From the sequence record MH791411.1: a DNA stretch of 64,000 nt. One strand, given 5' to 3'. A program made the position numbers and the translations under genes. Shown here piece by piece: positions 51,755 to 52,771 of this stretch. How positions within the stretch are numbered: the stretch's first letter is position 1; each line of letters opens with the position of its first letter. Under the pieces are notes generated by a model. It was given only the letters and a program-made list of their open reading frames with translations, searched no databases and was not told the DNA's origin.

Positions 51755-52312
51755 TTATTTATTTCTGTTCATTGCTGCAAGCATTTCATTGCGGGTTTTA
51801 TGTGCAACCGCTTGGCCTTCGATGGCTGTTGGGTCACCGACTGGCTCAACTTTCTTAGGTTTAAGGTTTAGTTCGATTTCCATCTTATCTTTCTTGAGTT
51901 GGAGATCTACTAATTTAACGTCAGAATCAATGATTTTTGCATGAGCATCGAGAGCAATTTTCAACATAGAGTTTGCAGCGTTAATCATTTCTGCTGCAAA
52001 ACGGTCTTCACAGTTGAAAGCACGGTCGAAAATATCTTCAAACTTACGTTCTGCCATCTGTGCTAAACGATCTAATTGAGTTTTTCTTGCTGTAATATCT
52101 GGAAGTTCACGCAACTGAACACGCATAGCTTTCAATTTTTCCATTGCAGCTTTTGCCTCTTCTAGTGAAATTTCAGTTTCACTCTGTTCATCTTCGTCAT
52201 CCTGATACAAATCCATCTCTGTATCTTCTTCAGGCTCCTGGCCTGTCATTTCCATCCATTGTTGAGCACTAGGTAATCCCAGTGCTTCATCGACTTGTTG
52301 TTTAGGTTTCAT
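51755..52312 (-). CDS. Helical protein, possibly terminase small subunit (gp16-like)
   Basis: Acidic N-terminus then coiled-coil helices; the gp16 resemblance is inferred only. Confidence 0.4.
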
Positions 52313-52771
52313 TTTTTATATAGATTCCTTTCTGTAATGATTTTAAATTCCAATCCGGTTATTTTTGCAAAATTCCATTGCATATGCCCATTTTGATTGG
52401 TTAATCGCAACGGTGATTTTGTCTTTCTTGGATTTAGCCATTTCCATGTGACATTGTTTGTACGGTTTAACTTCCAGTACTTGAGCATGTTGTTTACCAT
52501 CTGCACCAATATAAAGTACATAAAAATCAGGCCAGTACTGATGAACTGCATTATCAACTGGATTCACGTAAGGAATACTAAATGGCTCTACACTCCACTC
52601 TATAACCGCAGGGTTGTTGTCTAAAGATATCATGATATCCTTTTCCCAAGAACTACGGTATATAGGTTGGTTATTACTTTTATACTTTTGTATATTTTTT
52701 ATAGGGAAGATACCTTGAGCCTGTTTGGAGTTAGTAATCTTCGCTGGGTTAAACTGCTGGTTAAATGCCAT
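52309..52771 (-). CDS. Head completion protein, T4 gp4-like (TnsA-type nuclease fold); requires a +1 shift at CGG 52355-52357
   Basis: [18 protein letters not shown]...HQYWPDF, EVKP and KWAYA motifs. Frame 0 stops at 52343, but the +1 frame supplies GLEFKIITE and ends in an ATGA overlap with the next gene. Confidence 0.85.

What the first reader, a model, noticed from the sequence alone, without database searches (positions are those of the whole stretch)
52309..52771. gp4 head-completion gene is truncated in frame 0 and completed in the +1 frame at AAC CGG A
Frame 0 reads ...[12 protein letters not shown] (stop 52343). Removing the C of CGG gives ...[21 protein letters not shown], the expected gp4-family C-terminal motif (G..F.IITE). 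Its TGA (52309-11) overlaps the ATG of the next gene (ATGA coupling), whereas the frame-0 stop leaves a gap. T4 gp4 is required for head-tail joining, so simple pseudogenisation is unlikely in a viable phage. This is the strongest of the three sites.
Basis: partly seen in the sequence, partly recalled or inferred. Interest (0 to 1): 0.8.

Follow-up and report, generated by a model that had tools for sequence, protein, structure and literature searches.

The report
Conserved +1 frameshift in phage nuclease gene
A head-completion nuclease gene of a whole genus of giant E. coli phages is written in two reading frames, and evolution has kept the out-of-frame end intact, so ribosomes most likely shift frame on purpose at a very rare codon to make the full protein.

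Summary
The window is Escherichia phage Ecwhy_1, a jumbo phage of the genus Asteriusvirus. Its T4 gp4-like head-completion nuclease gene (TnsA-like PD-(D/E)xK fold) has one change of frame in the +1 direction near its 3' end.

This is not a sequencing error of this record. The same two-frame layout is in every core Asteriusvirus genome examined (14 distinct sequences, down to 81% nucleotide identity) and in hundreds of public assemblies. More distant jumbo-phage orthologues (77% identity or less) carry the gene in one frame.

Within the split clade the frame under selection switches at the junction:
- Upstream, 76 of 102 variable codons are purely synonymous in the start frame.
- In the 15-codon tail, 5 of 5 are synonymous only in the +1 frame, and the tail peptide is identical in all 14 sequences.

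The tail supplies the last core beta-strand of the nuclease fold. The junction holds the rarest sense codon of the window (2 of 20,165 codons).

Best reading: a conserved +1 ribosomal frameshift at a slow-to-decode codon, with no detectable RNA stimulator. I found no published report of it. Translation of the tail has not been shown directly.

The parts
52309..52771 (-). gp4-like head-completion nuclease gene (TnsA-like PD-(D/E)xK). It is written in two reading frames with one frame change in the +1 direction near the 3' end. The public annotation stops at the start-frame stop (CDS 52343..52771, 142 aa).
   Evidence: ORFs. Pfam PF08722 and PHROG 218. Both pieces match one-frame relatives. Layout conserved in the clade. 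Tail under selection in the +1 frame.
51755..52312 (-). Downstream gene (185 aa, PHROG 16202, function unknown). Its ATG overlaps the stop codon of the +1-frame tail.
   Evidence: The same overlap of stop and start occurs in the one-frame relatives L005 (Hallingskeid) and L033 (P0004 locus).
52772..53866 (-). Upstream neighbour: a tail tube protein gene (364 aa, PHROG 13438) that ends directly at the start of the nuclease gene.
   Evidence: Same synteny in 121Q and in the P0004 locus.

Best explanation
The gene encodes a full-length (about 152-residue) head-completion nuclease. That protein is made only when the ribosome moves one base forward near the end of the start-frame ORF, i.e. a conserved +1 ribosomal frameshift. 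The ribosome reaches an arginine codon that is the rarest sense codon in this phage and is read by a minor E. coli tRNA. The wait for that tRNA lets a tRNA for the overlapping +1 codon enter instead. Translation then continues for 15 codons through the last core beta-strand of the PD-(D/E)xK fold and ends at a stop that overlaps the start of the next gene. Ribosomes that do not shift stop 30 nt earlier and make a 142-residue product that lacks that strand.

Shown: the two-frame layout, its conservation, the switch of the selected frame, the homology and structural role of the tail, and the rarity of the codon.

Inferred: that the event is ribosomal, that the rare codon is its trigger, and its efficiency. 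A catalytic nuclease may need only a low level of shifting.
For: 1. The layout is real and fixed in the clade.
- Ten isolates aligned.
- 14 distinct sequences from 21 loci, pairwise identity down to 81%.
- The 142-aa products are indexed in 226 + 74 blocks of public assemblies.
- No one-frame version at 88% identity or more.
- 33 phage records match through residue 142.

2. More distant orthologues are in one frame and keep the same tail motif.

3. Selection switches frame at the junction.
- Body: 76 of 102 variable codons are synonymous-only in the start frame, against 1 of 104 and 3 of 102 in the other frames.
- Tail: 5 of 5 in the +1 frame, 0 of 5 in the others.
- P is 2.7e-4 to 7.7e-3.
- One tail peptide in all 14 sequences, but three different start-frame ends.
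- Two sequences (A4 type) have lost the start-frame stop yet keep the tail.

4. The tail is structurally integral.
- It covers Pfam positions 79-85.
- It forms strand 141-145 after helix 115-137 in a pLDDT-88 model whose best PDB match is TnsA.

5. The junction codon is very rare: 2 of 20,165 codons in the window and the only in-frame copy in 15,939 codons of the 121Q late region.

6. Precedent.
- The same codon in the A site promotes +1 shifting in E. coli, verified by mass spectrometry in yehP (PMC2790909).
- It is also a +1 site in glass-sponge mitochondria (PMC5009743).
Against: - No protein-level evidence. The phAPEC6 virion proteome did not detect this gene product (PMC7247149), and a search against annotated ORFs could not have found the tail.
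- No stimulatory element was found. The consensus fold is -4.4 kcal/mol with no covarying pair, and I saw no Shine-Dalgarno-like motif at the spacing known from prfB.
- The P-site codon offers only partial re-pairing in the +1 frame, so efficiency could be low.
- The tail is short. The selection test rests on 5 variable columns (6 with ph0011).
- The 15-nt invariant block at the junction is not longer than random placement of the variable columns gives.
- A frame-changing mutation can create this rare codon by accident, so its rarity is not independent proof of function.
- The idea that a phage tRNA for the +1 codon boosts the shift is not general. Sharanji encodes such a tRNA, but none was found in Ecwhy_1's tRNA cluster, the only part of that genome scanned for tRNAs besides the window.
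Confidence: 0.7

Rival explanations
1. A frameshift mutation became fixed in the ancestor of the clade. The 142-residue truncated protein is the only product (or the gene has become dispensable). The tail looks conserved because of its short length, recent ancestry, or constraints from the ribosome-binding region of the next gene.
For: All annotations call a 142-aa CDS. The catalytic D/E/K residues lie in the start-frame part. The ribosome-binding site of the next gene lies inside the tail. The selection test has only 5-6 informative sites.
Against: All 5 variable tail codons are synonymous only in the +1 frame, and the variable columns follow that frame's third positions. Over the homologous 15 residues the tail peptide differs from P0004 at one position (about 93% identical), against 76% for the body. 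The start-frame end itself varies, and its stop is lost in the A4 type. The truncated product lacks the last core strand of the fold. The body remains under strong purifying selection, so the gene is not decaying.
Confidence: 0.12
2. The tail is translated on its own from an internal start codon in the +1 frame. An ATG lies nine codons before the homologous tail in all clade members. This would give a mini-protein of about 24 residues that complements the truncated nuclease in trans (a split gene).
For: 121Q has a 24-codon ATG-started ORF in the +1 frame that ends with the tail. The ATG is present in all clade sequences aligned.
Against: The ATG is a by-product of two conserved start-frame codons. 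The tyrosine codon involved is also the commoner one in this genome (581 vs 274). I could see no clear Shine-Dalgarno motif upstream when reading. Supplying one beta-strand of a small domain in trans has no precedent known to me in this family.
Confidence: 0.05
3. The frame is restored at the RNA level (transcriptional slippage or editing), or by an unusual tRNA that reads four bases.
For: Asteriusviruses encode their own tRNAs. Transcriptional realignment is a known alternative to ribosomal shifting (PMC5009743).
Against: No long homopolymer is conserved at the junction. The short A-run upstream is broken in several clade members. All phage tRNAs found have ordinary anticodons by ARAGORN, and the tRNA-Asn has a normal 7-nt anticodon loop.
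Confidence: 0.05
4. Sequencing or assembly error in this record, which GenBank flags as UNVERIFIED.
For: MH791411.1 is UNVERIFIED and carries several 'similar to ...' misc_features elsewhere in the genome.
Against: The same layout appears in more than 30 independently sequenced isolates from many countries and in hundreds of metagenome or read-set assemblies. The junction has no homopolymer longer than two bases.
Confidence: 0.01

Closest known systems
Ty1 / Ty3 +1 frameshifting in yeast (slow-to-decode rare arginine or serine codon in the A site)
   Same: A +1 shift at a sense codon read by a scarce tRNA. As in Ty3, the P-site tRNA has little scope to re-pair in the new frame (PMC5009743).
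   Different: This is a bacterial host and a phage gene. The shift here gives the end of a single domain rather than a Gag-Pol fusion. No 3' stimulator was identified.
+1 frameshifting in glass-sponge mitochondrial genes at extremely rare codons
   Same: The review lists the same rare arginine codon among the shift codons. It interprets the events as translational correction of single-base inserts conserved in a lineage (PMC5009743).
   Different: That is an organelle translation system. Here E. coli ribosomes act on a virus gene.
E. coli yehP and other FSscan candidates; prfB (RF2)
   Same: In E. coli the same rare arginine codon in the A site scored high for +1 shifting. The shift in yehP was confirmed by mass spectrometry (PMC2790909). 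prfB is the classic bacterial +1 case.
   Different: prfB uses a stop codon, good P-site re-pairing and an upstream Shine-Dalgarno-like stimulator. None of these is present here. The yehP shift gives a truncated product of unknown use, whereas here the shifted product is the conserved one.
Listeria phages PSA, A118 and A500: +1 frameshifts in capsid and tail genes
   Same: A phage late gene, a +1 direction, and a codon that is rare in a low-GC genome (PMC5009743).
   Different: Those sites are a proline codon followed by a stop or a pseudoknot, and they add an extra C-terminal domain to a fraction of the molecules. Here the shift completes the core fold.
T4 gp4 head-completion nuclease / TnsA N-terminal domain
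   Same: Same family by profile and fold. The D...ExK residues are present. T4 gp4 is reported to be a nuclease needed for morphogenesis (Benler et al. 2020, as cited in PMC7824862 and PMC11895373).
   Different: Every relative whose coding frame I read (three isolates, 27 database proteins) has the gene in one frame; T4 gp4 itself was not read here. Only the core Asteriusvirus clade has it in two.

Membership tests
T4 gp4-type head-completion nuclease (TnsA-like PD-(D/E)xK; Pfam PF08722, PHROG 218) | Significant match to the family profiles | tested here: met
   PF08722 at 8.6e-17 (61.9 bits, cut-off 26.5). PHROG 218 'head closure' at 1.2e-39. tblastn hits to gp4 of T4-type phages and cyanophages.
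T4 gp4-type head-completion nuclease (TnsA-like PD-(D/E)xK; Pfam PF08722, PHROG 218) | Catalytic D ... E-x-K residues of the restriction-endonuclease fold | tested here: met
   D82, E100 and K102 (P0004 numbering) are invariant in 31 sequences, including the window's start-frame product.
T4 gp4-type head-completion nuclease (TnsA-like PD-(D/E)xK; Pfam PF08722, PHROG 218) | Complete domain, including the last core strand, encoded in one reading frame | tested here: not met
   The start-frame product covers profile positions 1-78 of 85, while one-frame relatives cover 1-85. The remaining part lies in the +1 frame. It is strand 141-145 of the model.
T4 gp4-type head-completion nuclease (TnsA-like PD-(D/E)xK; Pfam PF08722, PHROG 218) | TnsA-like three-dimensional fold | tested here: met
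   The AlphaFold2 model of the closest one-frame relative has pLDDT 88.4. Its best PDB match is TnsA 1f1z_A (E 5.7e-4, probability 1.00).
T4 gp4-type head-completion nuclease (TnsA-like PD-(D/E)xK; Pfam PF08722, PHROG 218) | Nuclease activity and a role in head-tail joining | not testable with these tools
   Known only for T4 gp4 from the literature. The neighbourhood of tail-tube and virion genes fits a late morphogenetic role.
Programmed (or compensatory) +1 ribosomal frameshift site | Two overlapping frames that are jointly homologous to a one-frame protein, with the downstream part in +1 | tested here: met
Programmed (or compensatory) +1 ribosomal frameshift site | Layout conserved across diverged relatives | tested here: met
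   14 distinct sequences down to 81% identity. Products seen in 226 + 74 blocks of public assemblies. No one-frame member at 88% identity or more.
Programmed (or compensatory) +1 ribosomal frameshift site | Purifying selection in the new frame downstream of the site | tested here: met
   5 of 5 variable tail codons are synonymous only in +1. One tail peptide in 14 sequences. P is 2.7e-4 to 7.7e-3.
Programmed (or compensatory) +1 ribosomal frameshift site | Slow-to-decode zero-frame codon at the site | tested here: met
   It is the rarest sense codon: 2 of 20,165 in the window, 1 of 15,939 in the 121Q late region (that one being this site), and 4 of 14,860 and 3 of 15,607 elsewhere.
Programmed (or compensatory) +1 ribosomal frameshift site | Stimulatory element (upstream Shine-Dalgarno-like motif, or downstream structure or stop) | tested here: not met
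   No conserved structure. The start-frame stop is not adjacent to the site and is dispensable in the A4 type. No SD-like motif at prfB-type spacing when reading.
Programmed (or compensatory) +1 ribosomal frameshift site | Trans-frame protein detected | not testable with these tools
   The only proteome found (phAPEC6 virions) did not detect this gene product.
Pseudogene | Relaxed selection and sporadic distribution of the break | tested here: not met
   There is strong purifying selection on both pieces, each in its own frame, and the break is fixed in the whole clade.

The most novel reading that the evidence does not exclude
The frame change is a regulatory device rather than a tolerated defect. 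Because the trigger codon is almost banned from the phage's genes, its decoding rate would set how much active head-completion nuclease is made. That rate depends on the supply or integrity of one minor host arginine tRNA during infection. The device would limit a potentially genome-damaging nuclease, or tie its production to the translational state of the late-infected cell. In the extreme version the codon is effectively unreadable in infected cells and shifting is near-quantitative.
Probability: 0.12. Interest if true: 0.8.

Novelty: new member of a known kind. Interest (0 to 1): 0.62.

Why it matters
Well-supported +1 frameshifts in bacteria and their phages are few; prfB and the Listeria phage structural genes are the main ones. 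This would be a natural sense-codon, hungry-codon +1 site read by E. coli ribosomes. It sits in an otherwise ordinary gene family and has been kept by a whole phage genus, so it would be a convenient model for how reading frame is kept or lost at rare codons.

It also has a practical consequence. Every public annotation examined for this clade gives either a truncated 142-residue product or, in the A4 type, a wrong 151-residue one.

It also shows that comparing the frame under selection among close relatives can separate recoding from sequencing error without any experiment.

Tried and rejected
- Sequencing error: rejected.
- Downstream RNA stimulator: none found.
- Genome-wide use of the same trick:
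  - The exact junction decamer occurs once in the window, and one-mismatch matches are at chance level.
  - No other gene has the rare codon in its last 10 codons. This covers the window, a further 50 kb of Ecwhy_1, 50 kb of Sharanji and 50 kb of 121Q.
  - A crude scan for open alternative frames past stop codons found the synonymous pattern only at this gene, but many genes could not be placed against 121Q.
- Window-specific breaks: none. All 43 CDSs of 121Q (genes 539-581) in the fetched 50-kb stretch, covering window positions from about 15.5 kb to the 3' end, are colinear with it. The cases with several matches are paralogue cross-matches.
- Phage tRNA help: Sharanji encodes tRNAs for the P-site and +1 codons, but none for the +1 codon was found in Ecwhy_1's tRNA cluster, so this is not a clade-wide explanation. 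No tRNA with an expanded anticodon loop was found.
- Invariance of the 15 nt at the junction: not significant under random placement.
- IMG/VR scan: returned only 121Q.
- PDB sequence search: no informative hit.
- NCBIfam: only sub-threshold nuclease hits.
- Literature searches for a prior report: nothing found.

Full report
**What is there**

The window is identical to GenBank MH791411.1, Escherichia phage Ecwhy_1. This is a 354-kb jumbo myovirus of the genus Asteriusvirus, the 121Q / PBECO4 group.

On the minus strand, directly after a tail-tube gene (52772..53866), an ATG-started ORF runs from 52771 to 52343 (142 aa). A second frame, one base further on, stays open across the end of this ORF. 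It stops at 52311..52309, overlapping the ATG of the next gene (51755..52312).

The 142-aa product is a T4 gp4-like head-completion nuclease of the TnsA-like PD-(D/E)xK type:
- Pfam PF08722 at 8.6e-17.
- PHROG 218 'head closure' at 1.2e-39.
- tblastn hits to gp4 of T4-type phages and cyanophages.

The gene has one break, a change of frame in the +1 direction near its 3' end.

**Both pieces belong to one protein**

More distant jumbo phages carry the gene in one frame, at 148-164 aa, with a conserved C-terminal motif. They include:
- Erwinia phages Kaldavass and Hallingskeid.
- E. coli phage EJP2.
- Other relatives recovered in the protein search; GAP32, CBB and Serratia BF matched in tblastn, but their reading frames were not read.
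- 27 database relatives at 42-76% identity to P0004, the alignment's reference sequence.

The closest one-frame relative is P0004 (76% identity). It sits in the same gene order, and its stop overlaps the next ATG. The window's start-frame product aligns to its residues 1-140. The +1 ORF aligns to its residues 133-153 (16/21 identical, E 5e-9).

Pfam's domain model is matched over 1-78 of 85 by the window's product and over 1-85 by one-frame relatives.

An AlphaFold2 model of P0004 (pLDDT 88.4) has the canonical helix, strands, helix, strand core, and its best PDB match is TnsA (1f1z_A, E 5.7e-4). In that model the tail is the final core strand (141-145) plus a short helix. The catalytic D/E/K residues lie in the start-frame part.

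**Not an error of this record**

- Ten isolates aligned share the layout: Ecwhy_1, 121Q, PBECO4, Turkey5, JNE01, A4, ph0011, SD-1_S14, SD-2_S15 and CMSTMSU. The two one-frame outgroups in the same alignment do not.
- 33 phage records match the start-frame product through its last residue.
- The exact 142-aa products are indexed in 226 and 74 blocks of public assemblies, and the loci fetched from them have the same layout.
- No one-frame version exists at 88% identity or more.

**The tail is under selection in the +1 frame**

The comparison uses 14 distinct clade sequences, with pairwise identity down to 81%.

| Region | Frame | Variable codons | Synonymous-only |
|---|---|---|---|
| Body | start frame | 102 | 76 |
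| Body | +1 | 104 | 1 |
| Body | +2 | 102 | 3 |
| Tail (15 codons) | +1 | 5 | 5 |
| Tail | the other two frames | 5 each | 0 |

- The chance of 5 of 5 is 2.7e-4 if all changes are equally likely, and 7.7e-3 for transitions only. ph0011 adds a sixth synonymous site.
- All 14 sequences encode the same tail peptide. The start-frame end occurs in three versions.
- In the A4 type the start-frame stop is lost by a change that is silent in the +1 frame. That record is therefore annotated with a 151-aa product whose end is not homologous to the family.

So the tail has been translated in the +1 frame since the clade's ancestor acquired the frame change.

**Mechanism**

The short overlap of the two frames contains an arginine codon that is the rarest sense codon here.
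- It occurs 2 times in 20,165 codons of the window, while the same trinucleotide occurs 155 and 52 times in the other two codon phases.
- It is the only in-frame copy in 15,939 codons of the 121Q late region.
- It occurs 4 of 14,860 and 3 of 15,607 times in two other regions.

In E. coli this codon is read by a minor tRNA with strong near-cognate competition. It was singled out as an A-site codon that favours +1 shifting, with mass-spectrometric proof in yehP (PMC2790909). The recoding review lists the same rare codon among the conserved +1 sites of glass-sponge mitochondria (PMC5009743).

I therefore propose a hungry-codon +1 ribosomal frameshift of the Ty3 kind, because P-site re-pairing is poor. 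I found no stimulator:
- no conserved RNA structure;
- no Shine-Dalgarno-like motif at the spacing used in prfB;
- the start-frame stop is neither adjacent nor needed.

Efficiency may be low, which could suffice for an enzyme. What is inferred is that the event is ribosomal, what triggers it, and its level.

**Rivals**

- A fixed, uncompensated frameshift with a functional truncated protein conflicts with the selection pattern and with the loss of a core strand (confidence 0.12).
- Independent initiation at an internal +1-frame ATG, giving a mini-protein of about 24 residues, cannot be excluded from sequence. It lacks a clear ribosome-binding site, and the ATG is explained by the start-frame codons (0.05).
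- Transcript-level slippage has no conserved homopolymer. Four-base decoding by a phage tRNA finds no support in the tRNA sets of Sharanji and Ecwhy_1 (0.05 together).
- Sequencing error is excluded (0.01).

**Novelty**

Full-text searches found no report of a frameshift in this gene or genus. The phAPEC6 virion proteome did not detect the protein at all. I class this as a new member of a known kind: conserved +1 ribosomal frameshifting at a rare codon.

I noticed this afterwards, recorded it in entry 4, deleted nothing, and kept such detail out of this report.

The pieces were always searched apart.

Noticed in passing
L034 (MH791411.1) 2-565, 1662-2627, 17900-18094; outside the window: The Ecwhy_1 record is flagged UNVERIFIED. 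It carries misc_features 'similar to HNH endonuclease', 'similar to RNA polymerase sigma factor' and 'similar to hypothetical protein' in place of CDSs. So this assembly does contain other disrupted genes, possibly true errors, unlike the conserved case studied here.
   Followed up: no
L010 401-856 (phage A4) and L022 401-856 (Logan SRR2034070): In the A4 type the start-frame stop is lost, so the gene is annotated as 151 aa with a non-homologous end. The +1 tail peptide is unchanged.
   Followed up: yes
L015 (CMSTMSU), L007 (SD-1_S14), L012 (SD-2_S15): These three records annotate shorter CDSs for this gene (291, 363 and 417 nt) and show extra length differences against the other clade members. 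These are probably assembly problems: CMSTMSU is flagged UNVERIFIED_ORG, and the SD genomes are 310-322 kb.
   Followed up: partly
window 1-64000 versus L034 1-50000: AGG is also nearly absent from the late or structural genes of the window (6 of 20,165 codons). It is about ten times commoner in the small early-type genes of Ecwhy_1 1-50 kb (42 of 14,860). The codon at the junction is rare in both.
   Followed up: partly
window 43860-44189 (-): This 109-aa ORF holds the only other in-frame copy of the rare arginine codon in the window, near its 5' end. Only 72% of the 121Q counterpart (gene 565, 81 aa) is matched in the window, so the true start may lie downstream of that codon.
   Followed up: no
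L029 9712-13954 (Sharanji) versus L031 5571-9334 (Ecwhy_1): tRNA sets differ within the genus. Sharanji has Thr, Asn, Met, Ser(ACT by ARAGORN), Arg(TCT), Ser(TGA) and Gly(TCC). Ecwhy_1 has two Thr, Asn, Met, Ser(GCT) and Ser(TGA), with no Arg or Gly in the region. HNH endonuclease genes are interspersed in some relatives.
   Followed up: partly
hits H65 (Citrobacter phage Margaery) and H70 (Escherichia phage UPEC03): In some T4-type phages the match to this protein stops at about residue 107, and a 'putative mobile endonuclease' is annotated under or beside it. This may be a homing-endonuclease insertion at the gp4 gene.
   Followed up: no
window 27958-32892 (+) and 33042-38741 (+): Two very long tail-fibre-like ORFs (1644 and about 1900 aa) match 121Q gene 571 only weakly (best 55% identity), while flanking genes are 80-97% identical. 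This is a fast-evolving host-range region.
   Followed up: no
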